A stretch of 64,000 nucleotides of DNA, taken from NCBI GenBank assembly GCA_964304625.1, contig OZ199839.1, positions 1,030,180-1,094,179 of the forward strand, written 5' to 3'. The position numbers and the translations under genes were made by a program. Positions 1 through 55,583 of this stretch are shown here, piece by piece (position 1 is the stretch's first letter; every line of letters begins with the position of its first letter). The notes under the pieces are model-generated. The model searched no databases. It saw only the letters and a program-made list of their open reading frames with translations, and was not told where the DNA came from. Source of the DNA: Kudoa neothunni (taxonomy: Eukaryota; Animalia; Cnidaria).

Positions 1-2
1 CT

Positions 3-2804
3 TTGGATGACAATTGGTTTGTTTATAGAGGGAACTTGTTTAGTAGTGATAGTTAGTGGTTTATTAGCATTTTTATCTCGCAATTTTCTGGCATTTGCTT
101 TGTTTTTAGCAATAGTAATTAGTTGATTGACTTCTTGAGAAATCGTAGTAATTTTCGGTTGAATTAATTTTGGAGATTCCTCTTCTATTATTACAGAATT
201 ATCCTCTACAGTGGAGAAGTAAAGGGTATCTTCTTGATTAATTGGAGTAGGAATTGTAGTTGGTGTTGGAGCTTTAGGAGCGTTATATGTTGGGATATTG
301 GTTGGTGGATCATAGTACACAATAAATGATGAATTGGATGAAATTGATGAATTTAGAATGTTTGGTTCCTTTTCAATTAGTTCTAATTTGACAGCAGAAC
401 AGTCGCCTTCAATTGATGAGTTGGGTGATTTATTTGGTGATTTAACACTTACAATAATAACATCTTCATCATCTTCAATGGAATTTTCCAAAATGGCAAC
501 GTCTAGATTGTTTTCCTGTGATGACTGATTCATCGTTGAATCGTTCAATAAACTGTAATTATTGCTTAATTCTACTGTATTTTCATCAGCCATAATTGCC
601 ATTAATTCATTTCTATATTGCTCATGTTGATTATCAAATGTTAGAGTTTTTTGCGACCTGTTTGATATTGTCTTATTAGGCGCTAACATTATGTCTATAA
701 TATTTATTTCCTCTGGGTTGGGAACTATTATTTGCTTAAAATTATTATTTTGATTCTCAATTTCATTTTCCCTAACTATCTGTTCTAGTTTTAGTCGATT
801 TCTTTCAAATTCAGCCCACCATTTAGCTTCCTTAGCATTTTTTAAGCGATAACTGACATTATCGCTATTGCTATTGTTAGCTGAGTTATTGTTATTATTC
901 ATAAAGTTGATTGTCTTGTCAGTGTTTATATTAATGTTAATATTAATATTATTGTTATTATAGTGGTGGTGGTGGTGGTGATTTTGGACATTATGTTGTG
1001 TGGTTAAATTGCATGTTGTTTCATTTCTATTAGATACAGATTTGGGATTGAGAATTGGATTATGGATTGGATTGGATTTGGTGCACGTAGATATAACATT
1101 CTTTTTATATAATTCTAGTGCACCAAGGAAACCGTAATTATTATCAATATTATCAATATTATTATTATTATTATTAATATTAATATTAATATTATTATTA
1201 TTATCATTATTATTATTATTATCATTATTATAATAATAATTTTGGTTAATATCATTCTCCGATGGTTGTAGTGTAACTTTAGCTGCGTCGTCATTATTCG
1301 TGTTTACATTGTTGACATTTGTTGTTGATATTGATGCTGATGTTAATGTTGTTGACGTTGTTGTTGATGTGGAATTAATCAAATTAATCAAATTTTGTTG
1401 AGTTGCAGATGAGTTTAAGGTTGCGGTCGTGTTAACATTGACGTTATTGATATGATCAACAGTTTTATTGGTGTTATTATTATCAATGAAATGATTGTTG
1501 TTTAATAGTGATGGAACAGACTTTTCTTCGTGTAATTGTTGTTCCTGCTGTTGATTAGTAATAGAAAAGGAATTAGTAGGAATGGTGTGAAAGAATGGTT
1601 GAGTCACGCAAGGATTAGCGTGTTGATCATTAATAATATCATTATCAATAACGTTCAATGTAGGAATAGAATTGTTGTTATTTTCCGCGTTAATTTTAAC
1701 ATCGCAATGCGTTGCAGCTATATTAAAAGTTACTTGTTGTTGACCGGTTGCGTCAACCGAGTCAGTTGATGGATTAGATGGATTAGCATGGTAAAGTGAT
1801 GATTTTGGAGAATGTGAAATTGATGAGTTCGAGTCATTGGAATGGGTAGATTCTGTTGGATATAAATTCAGTGGATCATTTAGCGAAATGATGAGGTTTT
1901 CGCAGTCGAGCAATGGAGAGTCGTTTACCGATTCTTCTTCGTCTATTTCTTCGTAGGCGTCGCATGGTAATTCGTTATCAGCGTAATGGTCGGTGGTGAA
2001 TCGATAATTATCATCCGCTAGCTCATTTACAGTAATCTTGTTGGTTTCATTAGTGAGTAAATTAGTGGTGCTTTCTAGTGATGTAGTGTGTGGTGATTTG
2101 GAACAATTGTCGATTGGAATATTGTTATATAAATGAGAATCATATTCCGATGGTTGGATGGATATTGCCAAGGTTAGTTGGATAACCAGATTATCGGGGA
2201 TTAATCCGATTTCCATAAAATTTTCATTTTTCTCGTTTAGTTGATCAATGATGGCGTTTTTAAGAGCATCAATAGAAAGCGAGTAACGTTGCTTTCGCTC
2301 TAGTACTCGTTTTGGGAGTTTTGGATTGCAACGATTTATTACCATCCAAACCAACTTTAAAGATGGCCTGATTTTGACATCTTCTGATGGTTCAATCGTG
2401 TCAATATTGGGACATGGACAAGCCAAGGTAGGTATGTTTCTATCGTAATACTCATCAATTGCGTGTTGAGCGTTTTCCGAGTGTTTAATTGAGGACAACA
2501 TTTCCGTAAAGATTGGCATAGAGCATTGAAACAATGAAATGTACTTTCGTACAAAGTCAGCCACACTTTTAGCTATAGGCGGTAGTTTTGCGCACGTACC
2601 TTTCAATTCTAGATATGAAGAATATAGATGAAAAATCATCGGTGAAAGTTCGTGGTCAAAATTCCTCAGCATCGAGACCTCGCAAACTGATTTTAAAGGT
2701 ATCTTCATAATCAGCGCATCGTAATTTTGCGAAATATGCATAAATTTTCCATTTCCGCTCCGAAAAAACGAAAAATTTTCGCCTGGTAGGGGGCTCGAAC
2801 CCAT
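3..2804 (-). CDS. Long Asn-rich open reading frame (>=934 codons, runs off the left edge); probable N-terminal region of a second tRNA-associated non-LTR retrotransposon ORF
   Basis: Manual translation of the minus-strand frame finds no stop from about 2860 to position 3. It is missing from the ORF track because its stop lies outside the window. It begins MGSSPLPGENFSFFRSGNGKFMHISQNYDALIMK from the ATG at 2804 inside the tRNA half; the next ATG is at 2741. It contains poly-Asn (~1140-1235) and His6 (~963-980). No RT motif is visible in the window, so the retroelement identity is inferred from context. Confidence 0.7.
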   Translation of the reverse strand, partial: MGSSPLPGENFSFFRSGNGKFMHISQNYDALIMKIPLKSVCEVSMLRNFDHELSPMIFHLYSSYLELKGTCAKLPPIAKSVADFVRKYISLFQCSMPIFTEMLSSIKHSENAQHAIDEYYDRNIPTLACPCPNIDTIEPSEDVKIRPSLKLVWMVINRCNPKLPKRVLERKQRYSLSIDALKNAIIDQLNEKNENFMEIGLIPDNLVIQLTLAISIQPSEYDSHLYNNIPIDNCSKSPHTTSLESTTNLLTNETNKITVNELADDNYRFTTDHYADNELPCDAYEEIDEEESVNDSPLLDCENLIISLNDPLNLYPTESTHSNDSNSSISHSPKSSLYHANPSNPSTDSVDATGQQQVTFNIAATHCDVKINAENNNNSIPTLNVIDNDIINDQHANPCVTQPFFHTIPTNSFSITNQQQEQQLHEEKSVPSLLNNNHFIDNNNTNKTVDHINNVNVNTTATLNSSATQQNLINLINSTSTTTSTTLTSASISTTNVNNVNTNNDDAAKVTLQPSENDINQNYYYNNDNNNNNDNNNNINININNNNNNIDNIDNNYGFLGALELYKKNVISTCTKSNPIHNPILNPKSVSNRNETTCNLTTQHNVQNHHHHHHYNNNNININININTDKTINFMNNNNNSANNSNSDNVSYRLKNAKEAKWWAEFERNRLKLEQIVRENEIENQNNNFKQIIVPNPEEINIIDIMLAPNKTISNRSQKTLTFDNQHEQYRNELMAIMADENTVELSNNYSLLNDSTMNQSSQENNLDVAILENSIEDDEDVIIVSVKSPNKSPNSSIEGDCSAVKLELIEKEPNILNSSISSNSSFIVYYDPPTNIPTYNAPKAPTPTTIPTPINQEDTLYFSTVEDNSVIIEEESPKLIQPKITTISQEVNQLITIAKNKANARKLRDKNANKPLTITTKQVPSINKPIVIQ
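2761..2779 (-). terminator. Pol III terminator-like oligo-T tract after the tRNA half
   Basis: Minus strand reads AAAATTTTTCGTTTTTTCG (T5, T6) immediately after the discriminator base. Confidence 0.6.
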
Positions 2805-2813
2805 GGCCTCAAG
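2780..2813 (-). pseudogene. 3' part (nt 40-73) of tRNA-Lys(UUU)
   Basis: CTTGAGGCCATGGGTTCGAGCCCCCTACCAGGCG is identical to 8572-8605. Upstream of it is retroelement 3' UTR (…TTTTTGTGTA) instead of the anticodon loop (…CTTTTAAT). Confidence 0.95.
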
Positions 2814-3268
2814 TACACAAAAATAGCGGGAAAAATAGTGTTCGTAAACTAATCTAATAAATGTTTATTTTGGGAAGGTGGAAGTTGGAATTGGGATGGT
2901 CCTTGATTGGTTGGATGATCTAAATAAAATTAACAATTATTAAACAAGTTACGTGCGGTTTGGAGGAGAAGATTTCGTTTTCGCAACTCCCTGTAAGGGG
3001 GGGTTGCGAAGACGGAATCTTGGGAGGTATCTTCATCGGCTTTTTGGACGGTTGGGATAGTGGTTTTTGGATGGATTTCTTAATGGATTTTTTGCGCGAT
3101 GAAGGTGGAGGTGGAGGCGCCAAAGTCATCACTGGGGTAGCTTTGATAACCATGGGTGGCGTCACAGATTTCTTCTTCTGGGGAGGTGGATTTTTAAAGA
3201 TATCATCAGTTTGGGATAGAAACACTTGGGATGATTGGGAGTTTTGAGGAGAGTTGGAGGTGGGGATT

Positions 3269-6200
3269 TCAATTGTTGGGATGACTTGTTGGATAGTCTT
3301 GATGATATTGGTGGATTTGGTTGCTGGAGTGCGTTTTTTTAGGCGCGTTTCGCAGCAGTGGTTTTTGGTTGTCCACATAGACACCATTTCTACAAATGGG
3401 TGTAGCGGAGGTTCCAAAGACATGGGCTCTCCAGATGGTCGAAGAGTCCAAGAGAACAGATCTGGTGATTGCTTTCTTTAAGGCTGACACCCTCTTTTTG
3501 TTTTTAACGAAAAGAGCTTTATAAACATCATTATTGGGCTCATAATGAGCCCCCAAAGAACCGTAGATCAGCGCATAAAGTTGGCACGAGTAGCCCTTTT
3601 CCATCCATTGTGATTGCTCCTCCCTGTACTTGGCAACCTTGTGTTGGTATACTTCTTCCAGGCGAGAGAGTGACGATTCGAAGGTGATGGAAACGTCGCA
3701 GATAATGACATCTTTGGTTTGGTCATTGAGGAGTACAATATCTGGTCGACGGTTAGAGGGGATCTGTGGGAAAATGGTGTCGAGGAATGTCACCCAATTC
3801 TTATTGGGCTTCATCTGTTCAGCGATGAGGTCAACAATATGGTTGTGTCGAGCGGACCTTGCTCTTTCACCGAACTTGCAGCCACCCAGAATATGTCCTA
3901 GGTGTTCCGTTGCCACATGGCAACGTCTACAGTCGGATTCAGAACAAAGTTTACGTATTTTCAATACGCACTTTGTGGGGAGCGCATTCACTCGCGCCAG
4001 GATGCCAAAGCGGTAGACATAGGGAGATACATCACCTTGGTTAATCCAGGAGTTTGCGACTTTGCTTCCCACAAAACACTCAACGGATCGTCCCTGCATA
4101 CGCTGAGACTTCCATACGTCGAGGAACATCGACTGAACATGCCACCGAATACGGCGTACTCGGGTGGCACCTCGCTGTTGATGAGGGGGAATGTGTGGTG
4201 GCGGACTGAGGTAATCAGAGTCAATGTCAATCTTTGAGGGAGACTGTTCATCGACTTGCTTGACTTGGAGTCCAAGAGACTTTGCATTCAAGCGGATGCT
4301 AGAGAAGATACTTCTCACGTCTCTGGACTTGATATACTCAGTGTCCCTGTTAAAATAGTCCTCAGGGGTGAGACTTTCGTTGGTTCTCTTACCAACGATG
4401 GATAAAATTGCGTCCTCAGACAGTTTGGCGACTCTTTCATCCGCGGAATGGATGAGGTTGAGTGCGGAGGCTAATCGGAGGGCACAAAAGTCGAGTTTAA
4501 GGCATCTCAGACCGAATCCCCCCACTGCACATGGAGTGTACAGTAGGGACTTTGTAACAGATTCGGGCATAGCTAACCAATGGCGAACTGATGACCGAAT
4601 CTCAGAATCGATTTTCTTGAGGTCCTCGATGCGGATAATGTTATTCTTCATAGAATACTCAAGGGTGGGCATTAAGTAAGTTTTCGTGAGGTTAATCTTC
4701 ATAAAGTGCAGTAGGGGAGCGTTTGAAACTTTTTGAAGGTTCTCACTAAACTTAGGGAAGCAAGGTGGCAGGTCTTTAAACGACTTTAGATTTTTACAAG
4801 TACCTAGGTACTTATAAAAATCCTCCATCAGCGGGATTGGCACACCTTGGAGAACATATGGTTGGATTAATGTGGAATTTACAATGCGCGTTTTATTCTT
4901 AAATGTGACATTAAGTGTCGCACTCTTAGAATGGTTAATGCGCAGACCAAGATCATTAATAAATGCTTCGAATTGATGGAGGAGGACATTCATTTGGATA
5001 TTATTCTCGGTCAGCAACACAATGTCATCGGCATATGCCAACGCACCAAAAACCTGACCGTGAAGTTTATATCCCTGTTTTGAGTCATCAATTCGTCGCA
5101 AAAAGGGGTCCAAAACGAGGTTAAAAAGTAGGGGGGATAAGGGGCATCCCTGTCGTACACCTTTACCATAAGGGTAGAGGTAGCCAGTTCCGCCGCTCTT
5201 ATCCGTAACCTCGTTGAAGCTGTTTGCGTACATATGTTTTAAGAGGTTGGTGATTTGATGGGGGATATTAAAGTGGTTAAGTTGCTTTAATATCTCGGAA
5301 TGGGGGACGGTATCGAAGGCCTTTTTCAGGTCTATCCAGACAGCAGATAGAGGGTTCTTCTCACGTCGTACGTCATCTAAAATTTCCTGGAGAATGAACG
5401 CGTGTTCAACGCATCCATTTCCACCGACGAATCCTTTTTGAGACGGGCTTAGTTCAACTAGGGAGGCGAGCTTTTTATTGACCACACTCATAAACAATCT
5501 GTAGATTGTTTGCGTAATAGAGATTGGTCTATACGCTGAGGGGTCCAACACATTAATTTCGCCGTCGGTCTTTGGCAGGAGTATGAGACGGCTAACAAGC
5601 CAATCATCAGGGACTCGCTCAGAATTAAGGATCCTGTTGAACAACTTTGCTAGATGAGAATCCATAGAGGGCACCTTTTTCCAAAAGGCCATATGTATTC
5701 CATCCTTACCAGGGGCAGTATCTTTCTTTGCGCGGTCCAGAGCAGCACTGACTTCTTCATCAGCAATATAAAAATCGCTGAATCGGTTACCAGACTGATA
5801 GAGGGCTTCTGTGGTATACGGCACCGGTTCTACTTCATTAAGTGATACTTGAGAGGAGATTTTAACTTTCTCAGGGGGCTTAATAAAAGTAGGTTCTTCA
5901 TCATCTAGCTTAGAGGCTGGAGAGGCTAAAGGGCTAAAGTTGGGAAATTTAAACTTAGGGGTAGGTGGAGACAACGGTTCACGGAATATGAGGTCTTCAG
6001 GCGCAACCTTTTCAGGCTCACCATCATTAGATTCATTTTCAACATGATCCGAAGGAAGAGAAGACATTTGACTGTTATCCAAAGCTGGAATCTTAATAGG
6101 GGAAAGTTCGTCAGCATTCGTACCACAGAGAATTGTCTTAACGTCGTTGGAGTTGATGAAGGAGAGAGAATCAACTATTTCCTCAGCAGATGCTTCGCAC

Positions 6201-8596
6201 CACTTTGGCCTAGCCTCAGTTATTTCACGAAAACATCGCTTTTGGTTACAGCGATATAAAACACGCAGACGTTTTGCTTCATTTTTAGGGGCTTTTTCAA
6301 CTGGAGAATCATCTTTAATGGTGACTTGAGTGGTTGATTCTTCAGGTGCATCTTGAGTCGGTGTAGGGGAAGCAAGAATATTCTTTAAAGCTTCATCGAC
6401 AAAGGTTTTCGCGGGCTCCGGAGCTTTCGGATGGTAAACCATCTTCAGTTCTTTTGCACCGTTATGCGCCGTTGTGATGAAGTGAGTATATAAATCATTA
6501 ATGGGTAATTCAGAGTGAGTGGACATAACAGACCTGAGCTCATTAGAGACGCGCTCCAATGTTTCAGCTTGTTTCTTACGAAATTCAGCTGCCCTTTTAC
6601 GAATTTTGTCATGTTTCTCACGAGCCGCTATTTCATTCATTACTTCCTCCGGAATTGAAGAGGTTTCATGTGCTTTTTCATTAGCGGCATCACGTTTGGC
6701 TTGTAAATAAGATGGGGGTGGTGGAACAAAGATAGAGCGCAGTTCGGAATCTGCGATATCTTTTTCCAGAGCGGGAAGATCTAGAGGTTTGTCTAGATTT
6801 GGGTTGAGTGGGATTGTATCAACATTTTCATGAGATTTAAAGGATTTTTGTCGACAATCACGCAAATAATTATCAACAAAGGCAAGAGAGTGTTGGCGTT
6901 TACTTGGTTTTAATTTGGATTGAGCAAAAATAGAATCATTAGGCGTAAAAATAACTTCCTCAACATTAGGCTCAAACTCGGACATAATTAATGGTGTAGC
7001 GCAAACTTTCTCCTCATTAAGTGCTTCCACATCAATATCGGAATTGTTAATAATAATAGATTCATCAATATTGACGGGTTGCATAGAATTAAGAGCTTTT
7101 TCATTAGAATTACCATCAATTAACTCATTATGGTGCTCAATGTTAGATTTGGTTAAATTACTCGATTTAACACGCTCATTCAACTTCTTACTAATTATAG
7201 TAGGTATAAATTTGCCAAACTTATTCTTAGTAAGCGCGGATTTTGATTTTTTGGGTTTAACGTTAACTGGTTTAGCTTTAAACTCATTTGGAGCATCTGC
7301 GTCATTAAACACGATATCGCTATCGTCCTCACTTAAAACTTTAGAATTCTGACCAATAAATTCCATGTTTTCATTTTTAATGGCGTTTGCTGCGTTAAGT
7401 GATTGAAAAGGTGTAAATTTAGCACTATCATTATTCAATGAATCATGCGCAGGCAACACCGAAGTGTCGTCGTCGTCGTTTACACTTAAAATTGATTCAT
7501 TATCACCAGATTCAACGTCGTTTAATTCAGTATAGCCTTCCATACCTTCATAAACAACGTTAAATGCTGGGTTTCCTACAGTTAACTTGCTCATAAACAT
7601 TGCGTGAGCATCTGGATCAACTACCAAACCATTAATGTTCTGCAATGCTTTAAAGCTATCAAACGAAGAAGAAATTTTATTATTGGTGGAATTAACAACG
7701 CTAAAAGGTTGTTCTAACTCGCAATTGTCACTGTTGTACTCAATACTATCAACAGGTGGATTATTAAGGTTATTGTTACTCATTAATATGAGATTAGGTT
7801 GAAAATTGTTGCGAGCTTTGCCAGAACGAGTAGAAGATGATTTTTTAATGTTATCTGATTTAATATAACTAAGGAAAGAATCTAAATTGTCATGAGAGGC
7901 GAATTTAGATTCAAAGTCACGGCCGGAGATTAGGACCAGATTATCTGCGACAATAACATTCCCATCGTCATTATACAGGATTAAAGGTAGTGTGTTGTTA
8001 TTTATCATGAAAAGAGCACTCTGACGGATACTCTTTAACAAATTGTTAATTTCCGATTTTTTAGTGCCAGATGGCACCGCTTTCGGCTTATTAGAGCGCA
8101 ATGAAACTTTTGATGCTGAGTCACTATCGGCACGTTGCACGTGCAAATTAAAGTCGTTAGTTTTATAAGGAAAAGTGGAGTTGTTAGATGCATCAATACG
8201 ATCATTAGATGTAACATTTGCACTACTATCTATCGATAACGCAGTAATAGGCAAAGTACCTTGTTTGTAGGCCATAGAGAGGGTGGGATCTTCGGACAAC
8301 TTTGATGATATATCTTCAGAAAAAGTTAACTCAACAAAGCGGGCTATACGTTGGAGAAAAGGAGACCCTTGGAGCTTCAAACGCCGACGTCGCAGAAACT
8401 CATCAAGGTAATATTGAATGAAATCTGAGTAGCCTGTTAGGTCGACTTCAGCTAAACTGAGGTCAAACCCAACAAAAGTGGCATCGTTAGATTCCTTATA
8501 ACCTAACCAACCATCTAGTGCTAAAATTTCGCGTTTTCGAGCTGAAAAAAAGGTCGAAAAACGAAAAATTTCGCCTGGTAGGGGGCTCGAACCCAT
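3269..8596 (-). CDS. Non-LTR retrotransposon polyprotein: disordered N-terminus, reverse transcriptase, CCHC zinc knuckle, restriction-like endonuclease
   Basis: RT motifs APGKDG, YRPISITQTIYRLF, QKGF, DLKKAFDTVPH, GVRQGCPLSPLLFN, YADD (5024-5035) and YKYLG. These are followed by GGFGL, CRRC-x7-H-x4-C, RHN, RRPDIV…DVSI…KVAKY and GSLG. The frame is also open to 8647 through the whole tRNA (1792 aa); the start codon is uncertain. Confidence 0.95.
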   Translation of the reverse strand: MGSSPLPGEIFRFSTFFSARKREILALDGWLGYKESNDATFVGFDLSLAEVDLTGYSDFIQYYLDEFLRRRRLKLQGSPFLQRIARFVELTFSEDISSKLSEDPTLSMAYKQGTLPITALSIDSSANVTSNDRIDASNNSTFPYKTNDFNLHVQRADSDSASKVSLRSNKPKAVPSGTKKSEINNLLKSIRQSALFMINNNTLPLILYNDDGNVIVADNLVLISGRDFESKFASHDNLDSFLSYIKSDNIKKSSSTRSGKARNNFQPNLILMSNNNLNNPPVDSIEYNSDNCELEQPFSVVNSTNNKISSSFDSFKALQNINGLVVDPDAHAMFMSKLTVGNPAFNVVYEGMEGYTELNDVESGDNESILSVNDDDDTSVLPAHDSLNNDSAKFTPFQSLNAANAIKNENMEFIGQNSKVLSEDDSDIVFNDADAPNEFKAKPVNVKPKKSKSALTKNKFGKFIPTIISKKLNERVKSSNLTKSNIEHHNELIDGNSNEKALNSMQPVNIDESIIINNSDIDVEALNEEKVCATPLIMSEFEPNVEEVIFTPNDSIFAQSKLKPSKRQHSLAFVDNYLRDCRQKSFKSHENVDTIPLNPNLDKPLDLPALEKDIADSELRSIFVPPPPSYLQAKRDAANEKAHETSSIPEEVMNEIAAREKHDKIRKRAAEFRKKQAETLERVSNELRSVMSTHSELPINDLYTHFITTAHNGAKELKMVYHPKAPEPAKTFVDEALKNILASPTPTQDAPEESTTQVTIKDDSPVEKAPKNEAKRLRVLYRCNQKRCFREITEARPKWCEASAEEIVDSLSFINSNDVKTILCGTNADELSPIKIPALDNSQMSSLPSDHVENESNDGEPEKVAPEDLIFREPLSPPTPKFKFPNFSPLASPASKLDDEEPTFIKPPEKVKISSQVSLNEVEPVPYTTEALYQSGNRFSDFYIADEEVSAALDRAKKDTAPGKDGIHMAFWKKVPSMDSHLAKLFNRILNSERVPDDWLVSRLILLPKTDGEINVLDPSAYRPISITQTIYRLFMSVVNKKLASLVELSPSQKGFVGGNGCVEHAFILQEILDDVRREKNPLSAVWIDLKKAFDTVPHSEILKQLNHFNIPHQITNLLKHMYANSFNEVTDKSGGTGYLYPYGKGVRQGCPLSPLLFNLVLDPFLRRIDDSKQGYKLHGQVFGALAYADDIVLLTENNIQMNVLLHQFEAFINDLGLRINHSKSATLNVTFKNKTRIVNSTLIQPYVLQGVPIPLMEDFYKYLGTCKNLKSFKDLPPCFPKFSENLQKVSNAPLLHFMKINLTKTYLMPTLEYSMKNNIIRIEDLKKIDSEIRSSVRHWLAMPESVTKSLLYTPCAVGGFGLRCLKLDFCALRLASALNLIHSADERVAKLSEDAILSIVGKRTNESLTPEDYFNRDTEYIKSRDVRSIFSSIRLNAKSLGLQVKQVDEQSPSKIDIDSDYLSPPPHIPPHQQRGATRVRRIRWHVQSMFLDVWKSQRMQGRSVECFVGSKVANSWINQGDVSPYVYRFGILARVNALPTKCVLKIRKLCSESDCRRCHVATEHLGHILGGCKFGERARSARHNHIVDLIAEQMKPNKNWVTFLDTIFPQIPSNRRPDIVLLNDQTKDVIICDVSITFESSLSRLEEVYQHKVAKYREEQSQWMEKGYSCQLYALIYGSLGAHYEPNNDVYKALFVKNKKRVSALKKAITRSVLLDSSTIWRAHVFGTSATPICRNGVYVDNQKPLLRNAPKKTHSSNQIHQYHQDYPTSHPNN
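8547..8571 (-). terminator. Pol III terminator of tRNA-Lys
   Basis: Minus strand AAATTTTTCGTTTTTCGACCTTTTTTT (T5, T5, T7) directly after the tRNA. Confidence 0.7.
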
Positions 8597-8644
8597 GGCC
8601 TCAAGATTAAAAGTCTCGCGCTCTACCAACTGAGCTAACCAGGC
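8572..8644 (-). tRNA. tRNA-Lys (anticodon TTT)
   Basis: GCCTGGT TA GCTC AGTTGGTA GAGC G CGAGA CTTTTAA TCTTG AGGCC ATGGG TTCGAGC CCCCT ACCAGGC G. Perfect 7-bp acceptor stem, 4-bp D stem, anticodon stem with one G-U pair, A and B boxes, discriminator G. One U50-C64 mismatch in the T stem. Confidence 0.95.
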
Positions 8645-9910
8645 CATGCATTGTTTTGGTATGGTTAGTTTATATAGTTTATTTTTGACGATACATCATC
8701 CTACTAAAACTTTAAACATTAATGTCTCTGATAGTTCAAATATAAATAATTTTTCCAAGATTGAACTTTTATCACAAAGTTTTTATTCAAGTCATATTAT
8801 GTGAGATACTTATCTGATTTCATGTGTATTACCTATATATTATTCCTTAATTAACGATTTTAATTCAGATTTCTATATATTTACCTTTTGATACTTTTGC
8901 GAAATTAAAGTTATATTTTTTGTGCATTTTCTCTATAATTGTTTCACTGATTCTACGTCTATCAATAGTTTTCAATAACTTTGTACTCTTTATTAAGTTT
9001 CATGTAATCATCTTCACTATTCTCTACTTTCAATTCTTCTACCTGTATATTCAAAAAAACATTAATTATAGTCCACTCCAGATATGTAAGGATAAATACT
9101 TAATTAAATAAAAAAAACAATGAAAACATTATTTAATAGAGCTTTTATATTCAACTTTATATTAACATCTTGTATTATACAGGCATTTAAATTGTGGGTT
9201 ATTATATTGGACTTTAATCATAAAATTATAAAAAGTTATCAACGAATAAATCTTATACTAGCGAATGGTATTTCAAAACAACTAATGTTGATTTATTTTA
9301 GGAAAAAGATGCGATGGCTACTCTAACTCTAAACATCACAATGATTCATCTGCGAAGAAAATTGCTAATGGACATTATAATTTCAAATAAACATTGTATA
9401 ATATTGCAGGTTTAGTGAATTTAAAGTGTCTTATTGAATAAATAATAGAATTCATCATTTACATCGTGTTGGATTTGATATTCAATACAAAGATAACTCC
9501 GACAATTTATTCATTGTCTTAAACTCTATAATGAAGAAATATCCATGATATTGCAATAATGTTTCAATTTTTGCCAATTTCTAGCATGTCCAACTTTCCA
9601 AATAACTTAACTTAACTTAAGATTTACACATTCTAAAATAAATACAAAAATAATCATTAAACAATCTATTCTTGGTTATCATACATATTTGAAAGTTAGA
9701 TTGTTATTGGGCTTGTTAAGATCAAAATGTTTTAATACCTTACTCGAAAAGAAGTTATTTGTGGAAGAAAACATGATACCTTTAAAAAAATGCTGCATAA
9801 CATAAGAAACAGTTAAAAATATATTTAACATGTTGCTTCGATGCAAAGTTTCTAAAATAATTATCAGAGAACTCAAAAACGTATGTATATATATATATAT
9901 ATTGTGTGTA

Positions 9911-11663
9911 TAGTATACAACAGTTGTTGCGTAGATGGATATTGCGCATTAATTTTAGTCGCCATTAAATTTAACAAAATCTCGGAATTAAAGAGTATTA
10001 TCATTATTTGCTGATTTTAATGTTAATAAAAGTTGAACTAATAGTCAATACTGAAAAACATGTACAAATCAGGATTACATGTTGTTATTTAAATCTGAAT
10101 AGATTCATTGCTTTTAAACTATAACCAGCTGGAACTGCCCAGCGTTGCTTGGGGAAGATTTCACCTAGAGGCATTTTTTAATAGCATTCAAAAAATATAT
10201 TGAAATCTCGAATTAACCCATAGAAACAAAATAACTAAAGATTTTTAATCAACTTACTATAACGATTTGGATTATGTAATTTAAATTATTATAATTTCTG
10301 TGAAGGAAAGTATCAATCCCGACGTCCATTTAAAAATAGAAAAAATAAAAGAGATAGAAGAAAACTTATGAAAATTAATCGTTATTGTTAAACAACCACA
10401 AATTGCATCGATTTCAACATAAACAATTTAAATAATTTGGTGAAATAAAAGTACAACCATCCGCATTGAATTTAATCACGTAAAGTAAAACTTAGCGGAC
10501 AATTTAATGAAACCTATGAACGCAGTATTTCCATTATAACGCTTCAATCAACGTAACTTTAACGTTCTCCACGAATTCGTTATTTATGAAACATATATAG
10601 ATTTTTTACTACATTTAAAACCATTAACAAAACTTTAAAATATACTTATCAAGTCATATACGTTAAAACTCCGCAAATAAGGAGTGTGTTTAAACAGACA
10701 CCCAAATAGAAACGCCAACCTTTATATAAAAATAGAAAGATAGATAGATAGAAGCAGTTAATGAACATATGATGGAGCATATAAAGGAGATAGTAACTTC
10801 AACCGACCAAGTTGAACTCATTTAATCCAAAAAACAAACTTTAAATCGACAAAATCACTATTTCATTAATACTTTTTGAAACTTTCGTAGTCCAAAAACA
10901 ATTAAACGGTTTTTTTAAATATCGCAAATTTATAAAAAAGTTTATATATGGCTCTCTATCTCTATAAGGAAAAAATTATCCGCACATGCGTACTTAGGGG
11001 CATATACACACACTGACACAAACAAACATACCGACAGTCCTCTTTTATATATATAAAGGATTAAAAATTAATATTTTTAAGCCCATTGTTAAAAAATTGA
11101 AATGAATATAAATGTAAACGATTACGTAGATCATTTGCTTTTTTTACCCAACCGAACCTTGGTAAATTTAAAAGAAAAATTTATCGCAATTAATTCCGAA
11201 GGAACACCTTTCTAGATACACAAACATGATCGAATTTGCCTTTAATTCTCAACTTTTAAGTTATAATAAATCTAACAAGATGGTTGTATCTTCATTGATC
11301 AGTTACAACATAGAAAACATGTCAAGTTATAGAATTATAGAATCTGCTTTTTATTCTTATAAGAAAGATTAATCTATTTGAAATGAAAGTGACCACATCA
11401 CGCATGTATTAAACACAGAGAAACTGAACAATACTATCTTAGAAATACGCTAACACATTATAACTTAAGACCCAAATGAATTGAATGATTTCTATCCCAT
11501 TGATGGATAGGATATCTAAAATTGTAAAATATGCATAGAAATGTACTTTTATAACAATATTCCAATAAATAAATGTTAATTAGTAGTTTTCAAAAAATAA
11601 TTGTGTTTTATATTTCATACGAGCGTGATTAGATAGATATTGCGCAATAACCGTTGTTGATTA
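9911..11663. mobile_element. Non-autonomous TIR element (Tc1/pogo-like, TA-flanked), degenerate copy 1
   Basis: Degenerate TIRs (tagtatacaacagttgttgcg … cgcaataaccgttgttgatta). Internal segments 9921-10124 and 11062-11660 align by eye with 55584-57873. Confidence 0.7.
10125..11060 (-). mobile_element. Non-autonomous Helitron nested in the TIR element
   Basis: Minus strand starts A^TCCTTTATATATATAAAAG and ends with hairpin CCCAAGC-AAC-GCTGGG then CAGCTGG^T (TC…CTRR, inserted between A and T). The segment is absent from the homologous copy at 55.6-57.9 kb. Confidence 0.7.
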
Positions 11664-20679: not shown

Positions 20680-21054
20680 TTAGTCTTTCCTAAACATGTA
20701 GGCATCTATACACGAATCGATCATATCATCCCTTTTATTAGTGACATGTCGGAGGGATCTTTTGAGAGCATTCCAAGTCGACTCTATTTTGTTTGTGTGA
20801 AGTCCTTCCGAATTTACAAATTCATATTTGTGGATTACAACAGAATGTTGAAACCCCAATTCATCCAGACGTGAATATGAAGGCCAACCATCCGTTACAA
20901 TTAGGGATCCTTCGATGACATTTCTGCAAATCATGTCCTCGAGGGTTGCTTGGTCCCTTATTAAAGTTTTATCAAAAAAAACCTTATTGTTTGTTATGTA
21001 CATAATCTCTTCCCAGCCCTGTACACAAACCTGGTAATTAGTTGAGTAATCCAT
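20680..21054 (-). pseudogene. Merlin/ISXO2 (IS1595-like) transposase remnant
   Basis: RDQATLEDMICRNVIEGSLIVTDGWPSYSRL…HSVVIHKYEFV…GLHTNKIESTWNALKR is a typical ISXO2 DDE core; the N-terminal part is lost. Confidence 0.85.
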
Positions 21055-21229: not shown

Positions 21230-21950
21230 GTTATTTTTTTACCTTGAAGTATGTTTAAAACATTGGACAAACAATTCTAAACTATATTTTTATTGTTTCA
21301 TAAGTTTTTGTACATGTCAAAATTGAATAATAACAAATTCGGACAAATATGCTAATTGTAAATATTTCAAGATGTTAACACAATATCTTAACTAAGGTTA
21401 TTATTTCCATCGATACACATATAATTGACCAAAACTAATAAATTTATAGAAATAACAATTCTTTGAAGTTATATTAACAACATTTTTACGTTCATCGAAT
21501 GCTATACTAAACACATATGTAAGAATTCCTCCTAAAAAGTAATAATTTTCTATAACCTATCTTAAATCATTACCCTATTGAAATTAATCAGCTCCAAGAA
21601 AATTTAGAAAATATATTTAGAGGGCACGTGGTTGTCTTCTCGATTTTAAACTATCCATACTTAAAACCTGTATAATTAAATTTGGTATTGTAAAATTTGT
21701 GTTTATATGATAAAACATATGAAAGAGAACAATTCAATGTTCGGATGAAAAATTCTTAAAAGTTGAAAGCTATTATTTTATTTTGTTATCAGGAATAATG
21801 AAAAAAGAAATTCGAAAAAAATGCGCAAGAGAATGTATTTTAGGTGTCGCATACTTCACCATTACCTGATATTTTATTGTACTATTCAATGGTGAAATGC
21901 GTAAAGATTTATAAAAATTTAAGAATAATTTTAAAGATATTTTGACGAAT
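21230..21950. repeat. Terminal region of the Merlin-type element; inverted homologue of ~53505-54420
   Basis: By-eye alignment, e.g. 21580-21760 matches the reverse complement of ~53770-54030, and 21830-21880 matches 53629-53690. Confidence 0.7.
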
Positions 21951-27989: not shown

Positions 27990-29150
27990 GAATAAAGAAA
28001 TGATTATATATAATGATTTTATATATAATTATGATTCAAGAACAGAAAGGGGACTTAGTTGGAGATGTCATAACCGAGGATGTTGCGGTAGAATCTATAC
28101 ATGTATTGGGGGAAACACGTGATTGATGAGATTATCCATTTGAAAATTCGCTAAAAAACCAGACATCAAGCAATTATTACTCCATTACCACCTTCTGATA
28201 TCATCATCAAGGCCTTCGAAAATGAATACGAAAGTATTTCCGATTCAATAACTAAAATTAGGCGGCAAATGGGTATTAAGCCTATCTCTAAATATGACGA
28301 TATTCCAGAAAATTTAAAGAAAACACTCTGTGGTCAGCAGTTTTTGCATTTCGATAGTGGTGTTGGCTCTACTGATAGAATCTTAGTATTTTCCCATCCT
28401 AAAATAATCGAATTTTTGAATAAATCCTTGGTATGGTGATGGTACTTTTTACATTACACACCCAAATAGGAGCACATGTATCACCCATAGTTTTTTGCTT
28501 GGTGCAAAACAAAAAATATGAAACATATTCTACTTTTTTCAAAATGATTTATGATAAAGTTGGTCCCTATGAACCCAAATATTTTTTCTGTAATTTCGAG
28601 GTAGCAATTAGGAAATCGTTTAATGAGGTTTTTAAGAAAACTGGAATTAAGCACTGCCATTTCCGCTTCGCCCAAACAATATGGGGAAAAATAAAAAATG
28701 TAGACTTGGTAAGTCTTTATAAGCAATCGAAGATTCTAAAATCCTACATACGTAAAATAATATTATTATGTTACGTTCCAGAATGTGATGTCGTCAGGAT
28801 CTACGAACTCTTAAAGGATACATTCAAGAATAAACTATGTGGTATAAAAATTGATGAATTCAAGAAATTTTTAGGAAAGGAGTGTATTTACAAAGAAACT
28901 AATACAAGCACTGGATTGTTATCATACGCGGAATTTTGGTCTGTATATGACCCTGTTCTTGGGGGGGGGGGGGGGGGGGGTATGATTCCACAAATAATGC
29001 ACTAGAAGCTTGGCACGGTTCTCTGAAAAGAAAGACTCACTCGGTACATCCTAATCTAAGGAAATTCATAATGCTATTACCAAAAGATGTGAGAAAATAC
29101 AACTTATATGATGGGCTTTCATACCATGAAAGTATAAGCATGTATTTTGG
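27990..29150 (+). pseudogene. Mutator (FLYWCH + MULE) transposase remnant
   Basis: WRCHNRGCCGRI, FLHFDSG…DRILVFS, WYGDGTF, PIVFCLVQNKKYETY, CHFRFAQTIWGKIK and TNNALEAWH across frameshifts. Confidence 0.85.
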
Positions 29151-31483: not shown

Positions 31484-33864
31484 TGTAATAATAGGCAATC
31501 GCTAAGGAGAAATTGTGATAACACGTCCAAATCATCAGTCACACTTAACTTTTAGAACACATAAAGGGTGTTTTACGTGATTGAGTGTTATGCCTGTAAA
31601 AATGACTGCGAGGGGCTAGGTGATATAAAATAGGTTACAACAACTAACATGTGTAACGAATAAATTATTCAATACGAGATTATGTTGCATCAACACTAAA
31701 AAACAATAAACCCAACGTAATCAGAATTCAACATGGCCGAATTTGTTCGTTATCACTTATTAAGATTACAACCATCATTCTGCAGTTTTATCAACCTATG
31801 GAAGAGAGATTTCAATCGTCTTTTAAAATAATTATTTATTCTTCACATGAAGAATTAATCGATAACTAATGAAAATTGTTTTATCTAGCGTTGATAAGAA
31901 TATTTTTAGCGATAATATTGTTTGGTAATGTACCTATCTTTATCAGAAACCGATTGCAATATCGGGAAAACAATGAATGATTATCATCATTTATATTAAT
32001 GTATGAACGATAAACCCAATGTCCTATCAACTTTAACTATCATATCTGCCTTTTGAGGATAATAATAACTAAAAATGTTTATTTCAATCATCAAAAATAA
32101 TGAATACATTTATGACCAATACCGGAATCAGAATCACAGCTTTATTTTACGGCTGCGAAATCCTAGTTTGGCTCTTGGCTTTTGGCGTGAGGTCAAAAAT
32201 TCTAAATCATTATTGAATTTTTATTCTTTTTTAGTTGAAATATGTTTAAATATTAAAGTGGAACTATTATCAATTAAAAGTTAACGTTAGATTTGAATTT
32301 TTAAAAAGAAAATAATACAAATTTTTAAATCAAGGCTAATTGAAAATAATGATAACATTTCTGGCTTTCGTTTTAAATTTTAATGATATTATTCCCAAAT
32401 TTAAAAACATATATTTAACATGAATTAATTTACTTCCTGATTAAACAAAAGTGGATTGATGTAATTAGATTAAATAGATGGGAATTAATATAATATATTT
32501 ATAATGGTTAAAATATTGAGAAATAACATGATTAGATATTACAATTCTAATGTTGGAATTCAATGAGACAACTAAGAGAAAGTCTCAAAAACTCACCAGG
32601 CATAACATTAATAACGAGTTTCCTGGAAAATAAGGTCTCATTCGAAAACATGTAATAGAAACTTGCTATATAACTACAATTTATATATAACCTAATTTCA
32701 TTTTCGCTATAAAACAATATTACTTAAGCTAATTATAACAAATAAAATTATTATACTTTGCTAAAAACCGACTGTGAATTATATAATAATTGAAAAAATC
32801 TTCATTTTCTGACCTCCTGAAAAATTATTAAACCAGTGTATAATTCATAATTTTAATGAAATATTGAATTTCCTATCAATTAATAAAGCATATAATAGCA
32901 GTTTATATCCTATATTCATACTTAGAAGTAAAACATTCTATTTTTTCCGATTCCAACACTTTATATAACATTTAAATTACTTCAAAAATAATAAATCAAT
33001 CAAATAACATTAAAATAATCTTAGTTTAAATGCTAGTTATTCCTCCAACTATGCTCTGGTCGAATTCATCCTAATTGGAGCATTAAATATCGTACAATTT
33101 TTTATTGCTACATTGGATGAGTTTTAAATCATACTTTTATTAAAAAATAAATTATTTTTTATAAATATAATATTACAATATTACGCAATTCTTGTGTTTT
33201 TTTTCAAAATTTAAAGGGTATTCTTCAATGACCGTTTGAAACAGATTCGACCTCGTATTTATACTAAATTTTGAGTTATGAAATGATTTTTGTATTAATT
33301 TATCCAAAAGCCCATCTAACAAACTTTAAGCTTATGCGAAATTTTAAAGGTCTTTTGTTAGCGATGTGGTAAATTTCGTTATTCCTGACATAGATTTCAA
33401 GTATATTTAGGTATTAATGCAGTTGTAGAGATGTATAAATTGATTACTGAAATACTTTACAGAACAAAATAAAATTTGATCATAAGAGTCAATTCGATTT
33501 CAATCTTTCGCTTCAAACAAGTAGTGTTTTAATTTTTAGTGGATAAAAATTTAACATTAGGCACAAGTCGTTTAACGTAATAAATAATAATAATAAATTC
33601 TCAAATCCCAGTAAAAATACATAAATATATATAAATGCATACAAATTAATAATAATATCAGACAGGAAAAAGGACAATGTTAGTGATCGAATAAATTTTG
33701 ATGTTTCATTTAAAAATAATCATTAATAGATTAATTTCAGTTGAATCGAGTAGGAAAAATTTTTACAATGCGAAGCCATAACATAAAAGCGAAAAAAGAA
33801 AATATATAACTATAATTGATAGCAAATTATAGAATGTAATCAGTGAGTTAGTTAATGAGCAAAT

Positions 33865-34286
33865 TCATCTGACCATTTCTCTAGTGCTTGGAAAATTGTT
33901 AAGTTCCTAATGATACAAAATAATATCAATTCAGAAAAATGGTTATTGTTACAACGTATTCTTGGCGAAGTGCACAAGAACCACAGCAAAGATGCGTACA
34001 ACAGTCTCCGCAGAAATTCCCCTACGAATTTGAGTGGTAAGATAACAACTGCATAAAACATAATAGGAATTGTGCCTACTTTGATTTCGTAACGCTCTCT
34101 AATTTTCGAACGAAAAGCAGCACCAACACAAGAAGAACACAAACCATACAGAATACACCAAGTGTAACGACTATCTCCAAACACATCAGCATTCATTCCT
34201 TCCACAACTGGTGGAAAGAAAAATCCAAGACAACATATTCCTCGTTCACGATGGCAATTGAATAAATCACTGGTCCAATCCCTCAT
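33865..34286 (-). CDS. PLAC8/cornifelin-family protein, paralogue 2, 3 exons (34286-34080, 34021-33953, 33906-33865)
   Basis: MRDWTSDLFNC…CCLGFFFP…FRSKIRERYEIK|GNFCGDCCTHLCCGSCALRQEYV|ELNNFPSTREMVR*. Introns are 58 and 46 bp, at the same positions as in paralogue 1. Confidence 0.9.
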
Positions 34287-37200
34287 TATCAAAATGAAAT
34301 GAATAATACCCTGAATTAGTTTATTCGGTAGAAGTGGATAATCCCAAATAATTCCGCCGACAATTTATTTTATCATTATTGGCCTAAATGTTACGATAAG
34401 ATGTGATTATGAATTGCTTAATGGACTACTGAGGTACTTGGCTAATATTTCCAAGATAGTGTACATCAATAACTACATATTTCTAAAAACACTATTCAAT
34501 ACATCATACTCAATTAATAAAACAATCCTTTAAATTAAACCTTATAATTATTTATAATCCTATTTTTATTAATAATATTGAAGGCGGAAGTTTAAATGAT
34601 ATAATTTAAAATATTATTACATTAGTTCGAATTATAGAGTTTGAATCGGCAGTATTTAAATTCCATTATAACTTTATTTAATCAACAGATAAGAATATTT
34701 CATTCTAATCTTATCACTTCTTCTACAATCTATATTAATTTGAATAATAACAATATATTGACGTTTATTTTTGGACAATTCACTGTATATTTTTAAAAAT
34801 AGATTTTTTTCAAGACAATTAAACGAATTTGTGGTTTTGACAGAAGAATCAACGATAACGTCCTTATTTGAGGGTGCGACGTTTATTCGATACTCAACAA
34901 GGGACATTTTTCTTTTATGGTTAATGAAATAGGGAAATTAGTGAGGTTTGAGCGAATTTTGTTACATGTAAATTTTTCTCAACTTTTAATAATTGTTTTA
35001 ACACAGAAAAATAACGTTACTGAACAAAATTAAGTAGAAATTAATATTAATCTCGTTATTAACTTAGAAACTTATTAAAAACTCCTAAACCCTTTTCTAA
35101 TTATTATGAAACTTCTAATTACTATGTTAAACTTTCTTAAAAACCAATATAAGTTCAAAAAAATAATTTAAGTCAGAAAACTTTATTCCGGACATTGAAC
35201 TTTAATAAAGATTTATTTATATGTGCCTTTTTACGTTAATCATTTAATATATTAAAAGCGATACTACAAATTTTTCAATTTTTAAGTGACCATAATTAGA
35301 AAAAATGAACTACAAAGTTTCACTTAACCCTCGTGGGATCAACTGAAATCATATGCGGCCCAATTCCGTTAGTTTGACTTTTTCTCGCATATCAAACTAA
35401 ATTAGAGGACTCAAAGCTCTTGGATTCCTTAATTATAGCCTGTAATTGATAATAATAAAGTCATAAAGAAAAAAGTGTATTTACTGATTTAAATATTTTA
35501 CTTTTAATAAGCGATGCGCTCGCTACTTCATTTAAATGTAGTTATTACGACTTGGTATAAAAGAATAAATATTATAAAGATAGCCGATGACATTAATTTT
35601 GATTAAAAAGTGCTAGAGCATTACCAGAAACGTAATGAATACATTCTTTGATTTTGTACCAAAGGACTCGGTTCGGCTATGGAGGTTATCCAGAGATTAT
35701 CCTTCAGAAGAGTCTTTAACATGCAATGCAATAAAGGATGAAGTACATCTAATTTCTACTTTAAATAAAAAAGGAGAATCAATAAAATACGTCGGCAGCT
35801 TTAAAATATATTTATTTAAAAAAAATGTTTTATGGTCTCCACATTTGAATAATTATAAGTTAGTTGGGAGGAGCGCGCTCTATTTAATCAACAAAAATCA
35901 AATCATAATTTACAGTTGCATACACGTATTATCGAGCCACACCGGGAATTGTAAAAATCAAAAGCTTGGGGTTTGATGTTCAAAATTCACGTTATAACTC
36001 ATTTGGATATTCTATTATAATCGTTTACTCCTTGAAAATGTTCTAAAATAATGGTATCTATCTATTTAAGCCATGATATCCATTAATATACAATTAAGAT
36101 GGATCATGGTTTATGGAGCGATGTAAGCATTAATGATAACTTAGTCATGGTAAAAGTCCATCAGCTAATTTTAATTAAATACATATAATGAGTAAAACAA
36201 CTAGGTAAAGTAAAAGAATTTAGCTGTTTAAAATAATTAAAAAGTCCTGGGGTCGAAAATGTCCCTAGTTGGTTCGGTTCCTCGCGTAAGTCTTTTTAAG
36301 TCGGTCCTTCGATAATTAAGTTGCTACAAATTAACAAATTATTCGTTCTAAGTATGTAATGATCATTATTTTTTCAGCTATAACATACAAAATAACAATA
36401 TCCTATTCCGTCGTTTTTTGTAAAATTAGTCACATGTACTCATTTGTAACACTACATAAATAATTTCTATAATTAAAAACCGAATTAATCATATTTTATT
36501 CTTGCGAATGAATTAGCTCATATTTTATGTACTAACTCAAGTAGTTGAAACATTTATCTGATAATTCTGGGTGATTTTTATCATAAACATTAGATCGATT
36601 TTAAGAAAGACAAAGATTCCACAGATTTTTGAAGTTTCCTAAATATTTTCACGGGGATATCACAACGTAATGAAACTAAGGTCGAATTTTTATAACCTCG
36701 ATAATAGAAGAGTACTTATATTTTGAATAGCGCAAAAGTGTCAACATTTTATAAGAATTATCGGATTCCATTACAAAAAAATCATCATCCGTAAACAGTT
36801 GTGATTGATACAGTTTGTCATGACGATGAAGTTTTTACAGAGTTTTTAAAATTTGAAAACAGCCTAGCAGCACTCACGTTTGAAAAAAATCGAATAAATT
36901 TTTTTTCGATTAATTATAAAATGTCAATCTAATGGAGTAGAAATACATTATTTTTCGAAATATCGCTCTTATAACACTGGGATTCGTGAAATTGGGCTTA
37001 AAATCCGACTTTGTTATGTTATATATAGATTGATTCTTGGGATAAACCTTTAATGAATTTTTGATTACGATATCACAATAACGAATGATTTTATGAAGTT
37101 TTACTTGTTTTTCTTTCCTTATATTAAATTAATTGATTTATTCCATAATTTAGCGGTAAAATTCCTTTCTGAATATCTTAATTTGTTCCTTGAATTATTT

Positions 37201-47000: not shown

Positions 47001-47607
47001 TGCGGACATGAACGCATCGAAACATTCGTTAAATTTCTCGCGATAATAGAACACATTAATCTCAATCTATTTAGCATAAATTTTTACCAACGTTGATTCA
47101 ATATGAATTGAGTAATACCAAATAGTAGATAAATTCGTTCAGAATTTCGATCATTATAGGGGGAATACATAACAATCTTGTACAGGCTATAAACAATAAA
47201 TTTCTAAATCACAGAAAACTGGACAATCTTACGCCATTTCATTCTCAAATTGGCACCCACATTCGACAAAAGAATCATTCTATCGGATTGTGGTAGAAAA
47301 TCTAGATAAAGAATTTAGAAAAGTTATTAGTCCAACAGCAGCTATAATTCACTTACTGTTTGGAAGAACTATAAAATTGCCCGAAACGTTATTGACATTA
47401 TTGACGTTATTCGAATTATTGATATTATTGGCGTTATTCGCAGTATTGTTGGCCTCTAAAATTAAAAACATGTATTTAAACCAAACAACGCCATTATCAA
47501 ACAATTCTTAGGATAATTTAGGTTTTACGAGACTGATTAGTTGGTTTCAGGTTGTAGTTGTTGAATGTTGAATTGTTTTGTGTTGGAAATTCGTGATTTG
47601 AAGTCAT
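44004..47607 (-). CDS. Unidentified ~1125-aa Asn-rich protein, 5 exons (47607-47529, 47455-47357, 47301-47233, 47186-47119, 47066-44004)
   Basis: A 3.06-kb stop-free last exon. Four GT-AG introns (73, 55, 46, 52 bp) give phase-consistent splicing. No domain recognised, and further upstream exons are possible. Confidence 0.75.
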
Positions 47608-55541: not shown

Positions 55542-55578
<37 letters not shown>

Positions 55579-55583
55579 GTGTA

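What the first reader, a model, noticed from the sequence alone, without database searches (positions are those of the whole stretch)
8572..8647. Both retro-ORFs are in frame with an ATG inside the tRNA T-arm, created by the tRNA's only true mismatch
Seen: tRNA nt 49-51 are ATG (8596-8594 and 2804-2802). From there ORF A reads MGSSPLPGEIFRFSTFF… and ORF B reads MGSSPLPGENFSFFRSG…. Both stay open into very long ORFs although their trailers differ by indels and then diverge completely. In ORF A the next Met is about 107 codons downstream. The T of this ATG (U50) faces C64, the sole non-pairing position in the stems; G50 would pair and destroy the ATG. The whole tRNA is also stop-free in this frame, with another ATG immediately before nt 1 (8647). 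Inference: the elements may use the tRNA sequence as leader and start codon, making it dual-coding DNA. Chance in-frame agreement of both is about 1/9, so this is suggestive only.
Basis: partly seen in the sequence, partly recalled or inferred. Interest (0 to 1): 0.85.

Follow-up and report, generated by a model that had tools for sequence, protein, structure and literature searches.

The report
Retrotransposon start codon inside tRNA gene
In a fish parasite with mostly one gene per tRNA, jumping genes insert into the tRNA gene and leave it rebuilt; those at lysine tRNAs keep their protein in frame with an ATG inside the tRNA, so one stretch of DNA may be both tRNA and start codon, which no RNA data yet confirm.

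Summary
Coordinates and frames are confirmed; "created by the mismatch" is not supported. The host matches Kudoa neothunni. This is the assembly's only tRNA-Lys(UUU) gene, heading six tandem units of R2-like (RLE) retrotransposons, each starting with tRNA nt 39/40-73. Relatives follow about 15 other tRNA genes.

ATG49-51 also occurs with a paired U50-A64 in the Lys(CUU) paralog and in a Lys half from another species. No Lys homolog seen has G50, and 50:64 mismatches occur in 3 of 29 tRNAs.

Four Lys-targeting families (A, B, Lys-CUU, the foreign one) are in phase and open from nt 49, against 0 of 15 families at other tRNAs; chance is about 0.001-0.02. Only A needs it: its ancestral-type ATG is one base out of frame, and Met108 lies past the conserved N-terminal domain. 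The other three have their own Met at codon 17-22. Two decayed terminal units are out of phase, and Ser elements tolerate a closed tRNA uORF.

No RNA evidence exists; frameshift, splice or non-AUG starts remain open. The scan noted the same idea at other loci of this genome.

The parts
8572..8644 (-). tRNA-Lys(UUU) gene, only copy found in the assembly
8572..8605 (-). tRNA nt 40-73, the segment repeated at the head of every array unit
8594..8596 (-). ATG at tRNA nt 49-51, candidate start of ORF A; U50 = 8595
8581..8581 (-). C64, mismatched partner of U50 (A64 in the Lys-CUU paralog)
8645..8647 (-). In-frame ATG just before nt 1; first unit only, probably chance
8545..8568 (-). T5, T5, T7 tracts: Pol III terminator-like trailer carried by family A, read through in ORF A
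8482..8494 (-). Leader motif GAATCTAACGATG shared between families; its ATG (8484-8482) starts the ORF in the Ser, Thr-AGT, Gly, Cys and Val-AAC families but is one base out of frame in A
8464..8470 (-). G GGT TTG heptamer, possible -1 slip site (rival start mechanism, untested)
   Evidence: inference
8342..8455 (-). Approximate conserved N-terminal helical block (about codons 48-85), upstream of Met108
8273..8275 (-). Met108, next in-frame ATG of ORF A
3269..8596 (-). ORF A, 1775 aa from the tRNA ATG
4910..5575 (-). Reverse transcriptase domain (PF00078, aa 1008-1229)
3587..4033 (-). CCHC zinc knuckle and PD-(D/E)xK restriction-like endonuclease (approximate limits)
2814..8571 (-). Body of element A, from tRNA end to 3' junction
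2780..2813 (-). Second tRNA 3' half (nt 40-73) heading element B, identical to the gene
2802..2804 (-). ATG49-51 of the second half, in frame with ORF B
2739..2741 (-). B's own in-frame Met (codon 22); another at 2708-2706 (codon 33)
1..2804 (-). ORF B, open at least 934 codons; runs into an assembly gap just beyond the window

Best explanation
SHOWN: a clade of single-ORF RT-CCHC-RLE retrotransposons sits in tRNA genes of Kudoa at nt 37-40. tRNA nt ~39-73 heads every unit, so the gene in front stays whole and is followed by element-specific T-tracts. ATG49-51 is an ordinary feature of Lys T-stems here and does not depend on the U50-C64 mismatch. INFERRED: the element RNA includes the tRNA 3' half as its leader, either from a start near nt 38-40 or by read-through, so ATG49 is the first AUG met. 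At Lys tRNAs selection keeps the trailer in phase and stop-free. B, Lys-CUU and the foreign family keep an internal Met, so ATG49 only adds 16-21 residues. In A the ancestral-type ATG is out of frame and ATG49 is the only AUG that gives the full N-terminal domain. tRNA nt 49-73 would then be both tRNA and the first eight codons.
For: Four of four Lys families with a readable N-terminus are in phase and open from nt 49, against 0 of 15 at other tRNAs. Trailers before the own Met are 23, 29 and 38 nt of homopolymer-rich DNA, so phase survived indels. A and B belong to different subclades. Shuffle-based chance: A 0.054, B 0.29, Lys-CUU 0.33, foreign 0.17; product about 9e-4, or about 0.016 if the B clade counts once (my arithmetic). 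B-clade members at Thr-UGU and Ser have lost the link. A has no CTG, GTG, TTG or ACG in frame before the domain, only ATT and AAG. A is under purifying selection, 20 synonymous to 8 non-synonymous changes between two copies, so it has been translated somehow. A diverged third unit in the Lys-CUU array is also in phase by coordinates.
Against: No RNA, ribosome or peptide data: the one RNA run laid gave no reads. T-tracts follow the tRNA and element-specific sequence begins within 1-3 nt of nt 73, which fits an RNA that starts at the RNase Z site and lacks the ATG. The two terminal, decayed units are out of phase. Ser elements carry an ATG at tRNA nt 43 that opens only a closed 2- or 14-codon uORF, so a tRNA ATG need not be used. 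A sister family of A at C1:2,997,477 aligns to A codons 14-97 in one frame with one stop, and no ATG-type T-arm was found there, which hints at another start mode in the A clade. The comparison is post hoc and three of the four families are related.
Confidence: 0.5

Rival explanations
1. The repeated tRNA half is a ~35-bp target-site duplication and the element RNA begins after nt 73, for example by RNase Z release of a read-through trailer, in the way R2 is cut from the rRNA co-transcript. ATG49 is not in the mRNA. B-type families start at their own Met; A starts by a -1 frameshift after the motif ATG, by removal of a 56-nt GT-AG intron after an upstream out-of-frame ATG, or without AUG. The phase agreement is luck plus shared ancestry.
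For: Family-specific sequence starts at the tRNA 3' end in every array. A's motif ATG lies 71 nt before the YY block, against 72 and 75 nt in two Ser families, and a G GGT TTG heptamer follows. Five GT-AG joins can restore the frame on paper. Gln families have a canonical-looking short intron before their ATG in two species. R2 is thought to start cap-independently (PMC12203849).
Against: It needs the 4/4 versus 0/15 pattern to be chance, and A's 107-nt stretch to be stop-free by chance (0.16). The donors (GTTAGG, GTTTGA) are weak compared with GTAAGT in the Gln families. A slip heptamer ending in G is atypical (own knowledge).
Confidence: 0.3
2. The leader contains ATG49, but selection only prevents it from acting as an inhibitory upstream ORF. 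Most protein starts at downstream Mets (B clade) or Met108 (A), with the N-terminal domain dispensable in A or supplied by other families.
For: B, Lys-CUU and the foreign family all keep a Met at codon 17-22, and Thr-UGU has one at the matching place.
Against: Ser families tolerate a closed tRNA uORF. A's codons 48-85 still align with the domain of other families.
Confidence: 0.13
3. One reading: an ancestral G50-C64 pair mutated to U50 and was kept because it gave the elements a start codon.
For: U50-C64 is the only mismatch of this tRNA and is present in all six halves of the array. G50 to U is a single step. One dispersed T-arm-like copy reads AGGGG.
Against: Lys(CUU) and the foreign Lys half have ATG with U50-A64. 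Five unrelated Lys(UUU) genes have A50-U64, U50-A64 or C50-G64, none G50. 50:64 is also mismatched in Thr-AGU and Ala-CGC and a wobble pair in five more tRNAs. The true ortholog in another Kudoa was not obtained, so direction is not proven.
Confidence: 0.07

Closest known systems
tRNA-targeting RLE elements near NeSL: NeSL-1_TV (tRNA-Pro), LIN15_SM (tRNA-Arg), LIN25_SM (tRNA-Glu) (PMC4640811)
   Same: RLE non-LTR elements specific for tRNA genes; LIN15 3' junctions lie near the anticodon arm (machine-read supplement).
   Different: That paper frames targeting as use of multicopy repeats and, in the passages read, reports no rebuilt gene or tRNA-derived start codon. Here about 16 different, mostly single-copy tRNA genes are used at one structural position. 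No N-terminal zinc finger. Clade relationship not tested.
R2 (R2Tg, R2Bm)
   Same: Best solved-structure match over RT, CCHC and RLE (E 1.8e-78); single ORF; target is a structured RNA gene; possible co-transcription with the target.
   Different: Target is tRNA, not 28S rDNA. No ZF or Myb N-terminus. No HDV-like ribozyme found by Rfam.
Utopia (U2 snRNA), R9, SLACS/CRE
   Same: Insertion into small RNA genes, tandem arrays (Utopia), 20-bp duplications in reptile Utopia; long duplication in R9 (reference title); SLACS/CRE from memory.
   Different: Different targets; no described use of target sequence as start codon in the papers read.
Dada DNA transposons and Dictyostelium TRE
   Same: Use tRNA genes as landmarks (PMC8869645; PMC5391098 abstract).
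   Different: Dada is a DNA transposon in genes with many copies; TRE inserts beside, not inside, the gene.

Membership tests
RLE-type non-LTR retrotransposon | Single long ORF with non-LTR RT | tested here: met
   PF00078 E 6.5e-37; best PDB hits are R2 proteins
RLE-type non-LTR retrotransposon | C-terminal CCHC knuckle and PD-(D/E)xK endonuclease | tested here: met
   Aligned to R2Tg C-terminus, E 7e-19, with CCHC and PD..D..E..K columns present
RLE-type non-LTR retrotransposon | Precise 3' junction at a fixed target site, no LTRs | tested here: met
   3' junctions at tRNA nt 37-40 at seven different tRNA loci
R2 clade in the strict sense | 28S rDNA target | tested here: not met
   Targets are tRNA genes
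R2 clade in the strict sense | N-terminal zinc finger(s) and Myb domain | tested here: not met
   None by Pfam in ORF A or P0001, found in outgroup P0003; N-terminus models as helical with no clear fold match
R2 clade in the strict sense | 5' HDV-like ribozyme | tested here: inconclusive
   No Rfam match at E up to 5 in 2500-9200; diverged ribozymes can be missed
NeSL/Utopia/LIN group | RT phylogeny inside the group | not tested
   No named reference sequences were available; trees show only that the Kudoa elements form one clade
NeSL/Utopia/LIN group | Small RNA gene target | tested here: met
NeSL/Utopia/LIN group | N-terminal zinc fingers (as in Utopia) | tested here: not met
   feature from PMC4640811
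Dual-coding tRNA / start codon | Phase and openness kept across independent families | tested here: met
   4 of 4 versus 0 of 15; two decayed terminal units are exceptions
Dual-coding tRNA / start codon | mRNA contains the tRNA half and ribosomes start at ATG49 | not testable with these tools
   No RNA run holds the stretch

The most novel reading that the evidence does not exclude
The T-stem of an essential single-copy tRNA gene supplies the working start codon and first eight codons of a retrotransposon protein. Family A depends on it, and the link arose at least twice in a retrotransposon radiation that occupies single-copy tRNA genes without destroying them.
Probability: 0.45. Interest if true: 0.87.

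Novelty: new variant of a known kind. Interest (0 to 1): 0.7.

Why it matters
Site-specific retrotransposons are described as favouring multicopy genes because single-copy insertions are harmful (PMC4640811, PMC8869645). Here one clade occupies about half of the tRNA genes examined, most of them single-copy, at one structural position, and leaves each gene whole. If the insertion itself restores the gene, that is a natural safe-harbour design and a set of retargeted RLE proteins for studying specificity. If ATG49 is used, a eukaryotic tRNA gene overlaps a protein start, and the question of how RLE elements are transcribed and translated becomes testable with a simple reporter. A recent preprint calls LINEs nearly absent in Myxozoa (10.64898/2026.02.11.705288); this genome has many. 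I found no description of these elements in eight literature searches, which cover open papers only and not Repbase.

Tried and rejected
Element-free Lys(UUU) comparison: impossible, single copy. Kudoa Lys(UUU) ortholog: not found; the 91%-identical L078 lies in a dense AT-rich tRNA cluster that looks like a giant virus, not a myxozoan. RNA: run X10 gave no reads; X1, X2 and X4 are one sample, look like DNA and are not independent. Loose ends at 8607 and 8632 fall at TTAA and CTNAG sites and one partner is window 15309, so I treat them as probable proximity-ligation junctions, not alleles (inference). Motif as reverse B-box or T-loop partner: no covariation with the host tRNA, rejected by eye. 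Motif as branch point: rejected for Ser-type families because the residues after it are conserved. N-terminal fold search: best Z 6.1, unspecific. N-terminal homolog search with A alone: none. The careful tree did not finish; quick and FastTree trees were used.
Full report
Observation. The tRNA-Lys(UUU) lies at 8572-8644 on the minus strand. Nucleotides 49-51 are ATG at 8596-8594, and again at 2804-2802 in a second copy of nt 40-73. ORF A runs 1775 codons from this ATG and ORF B at least 934. A's next in-frame Met is codon 108. U50-C64 is the only non-standard pair. Contigs from three runs of one sample show no variant there, but they may come from the assembly's own specimen. The extra ATG before nt 1 belongs to the first unit only, and 24 of 87 tRNA frames here are stop-free, so it adds little.

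Host. The genome has 40,260,978 bases in 4 contigs, with C2 at 12.04 Mb. This matches Kudoa neothunni: 40.2 Mb, three chromosomes, N50 12.0 Mb (PMC12239612). The identification rests on these statistics, not on a marker gene.

What the locus is. The gene is the only Lys(UUU) found in the assembly. It heads six tandem units, A, B, B, A, A and a decayed C, each starting with an identical nt 39/40-73. ORF A has RT, a CCHC knuckle and a PD-(D/E)xK endonuclease, closest to R2 proteins among solved structures. Related elements follow about 15 other tRNA genes: Gln-UUG, Gln-CUG, Phe, Asn, Thr-UGU, Thr-AGU, Cys, Ser-AGA, Lys-CUU, Ile, Met, Val-CAC, Val-AAC, Gly-UCC and one unnamed tRNA at C1:3.80 Mb. 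Where the 3' junction was in hand, it is followed by the cognate tRNA from nt 37-40. Of 30 tRNA loci typed, only Gly-GCC appeared twice; the tRNA search scored only the best candidates, so this is a partial list. The elements form one well-supported clade, with A and B in different subclades. Two public metagenome assemblies hold the same arrangement from other species: Gln halves (L067), a whole Ser-CGA gene plus element (L070) and a Lys half (L073).

Test 1: did the mismatch make the ATG? Not supported. The Lys(CUU) paralog reads ATGGG/CCCAT, fully paired, as does the foreign Lys half. Five unrelated Lys(UUU) genes have A50-U64, U50-A64 or C50-G64, none G50. Pair 50:64 is also mismatched in Thr-AGU and Ala-CGC and is a wobble in five more of 29 tRNAs. 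The simplest reading is a tolerated change at 64. The real ortholog was not obtained, so direction is not proven.

Test 2: is the frame link more than chance? Probably. The Lys-CUU family (three copies, broken further downstream) is in phase and open from ATG49 into the N-terminal domain. So is the foreign element L073, open for 921 codons and 35% identical to B. Of 15 families at tRNAs without ATG49, three are in phase but closed, two are open but out of phase, and none is both. Phase (1/3) times shuffled openness gives 0.054, 0.29, 0.33 and 0.17 for A, B, Lys-CUU and L073. The product is about 9e-4, or about 0.016 if the three B-clade families count once. Against this, the two terminal decayed units are out of phase, and Ser elements carry a tRNA ATG at nt 43 that opens only a short closed uORF. 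The test is post hoc.

Test 3: who needs the ATG? Most families have their own ATG 50-145 nt past the tRNA, often at the end of a shared motif, GCTGAATCTAACGATG; L070 shows the same in another species. B, Lys-CUU and L073 have a Met at codon 22, 17 and 19. A is the exception. Its motif ATG (8484-8482) is 71 nt from the conserved YY block, against 72 and 75 nt in Ser families, and opens a 10-codon frame. No CTG, GTG, TTG or ACG is in frame before the domain, and Met108 lies past it. All three A copies share this, and A is under purifying selection. So A starts at ATG49, or by frameshift, splicing or non-AUG initiation. A sister family aligns to codons 14-97 in one frame with one stop, with no ATG-type T-arm found beside it.

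Mechanism. Shown: architecture, insertion site, whole gene in front, phase pattern. Inferred: first-strand nick near nt 39 and target-primed reverse transcription (established RLE biology); restoration of the tRNA by a carried leader or a 35-bp duplication, not separated here; initiation at ATG49 (0.5). The main rival is an RNA starting after nt 73 with a non-standard start for A (0.3).

Known systems. tRNA-specific RLE elements exist: NeSL-1_TV, LIN15_SM, LIN25_SM (PMC4640811). These elements work like R2 but fail R2 membership on target and N-terminal domains. NeSL-group membership was not tested. I found no report of a single-copy tRNA radiation or a tRNA-embedded start codon in the searchable literature.

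Verdict. Real feature, new variant of a known kind, interest 0.70. The mismatch story should be dropped. The tRNA-start hypothesis is better supported than first stated but unproven.

Noticed in passing
G000 tRNA loci L013-L041; RT loci L042-L066: About half of the typed tRNA genes, mostly single-copy, are followed by members of one RLE clade, several as tandem arrays (Gln-UUG at least seven units, Lys-CUU five). This is the larger finding behind the one given.
   Followed up: partly
L027 (about 85-120 nt after tRNA-Gln-UUG); L067 about 115-153 and second unit: Gln-targeting families carry a short GTAAGT...TTTTTAG intron-like piece just before their ATG, in two species. An intron kept in a retrotransposon leader is odd and bears on which polymerase makes the RNA.
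   Followed up: no
window 8482-8494 and trailers of L013, L014, L018, L028, L030, L040, L070: Motif GCTGAATCTAACGATG is conserved as nucleotides across families about 50% identical in RT, in different frames; function unexplained.
   Followed up: partly
G000 C1:2997477-2997728 and C1:3003772-3004014: Sister family of A with an unidentified target tRNA and an unknown start; coordinates only.
   Followed up: partly
G000, about 15 places, e.g. C1:855921, C3:1334458, C3:3195572: Dispersed family with a Lys-like T-arm (GGTCATGGGTTCGACCCTC and variants); SINE or tRNA-built LTR element.
   Followed up: no
G000 C2:688009 and 698477; C1:15358995 and 15371099: Two tRNA genes duplicated whole 10-12 kb apart (Gly-GCC and one not typed).
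   Followed up: no
L047 and L063 3' junctions: Downstream tRNA halves differ from the working gene (Gln one base, with a better acceptor pair; Ile two bases), so old halves record earlier tRNA states or decay.
   Followed up: partly
window 2094-2741 (-): The N-terminal region of these elements models as a helical domain (pLDDT 66) with no Pfam or clear fold match; it sits where R2 has its zinc finger and Myb DNA-binding module.
   Followed up: partly
window about 3340 (-): The window's A copy ends at 1775 aa because of a one-base difference in the tail after the endonuclease; another copy runs to 1881 aa.
   Followed up: yes
L062 (C3:3350844-3354542): A-clade RT and endonuclease inside a Lys-CUU array unit whose 5' end is B-clade: chimera or nested truncated insertion.
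   Followed up: no
window 21269-21935 with 53534-54368; 9882-11550 with 55555-57706: Old inverted and direct dispersed repeat pairs, 77-96% alike in blocks.
   Followed up: no
window 28433-29005, 20680-21054, 33852-34292, 44004-47054: MULE and IS1595-like transposase fragments, a PLAC8-family ORF, and a 1016-codon ORF without a Pfam match.
   Followed up: no
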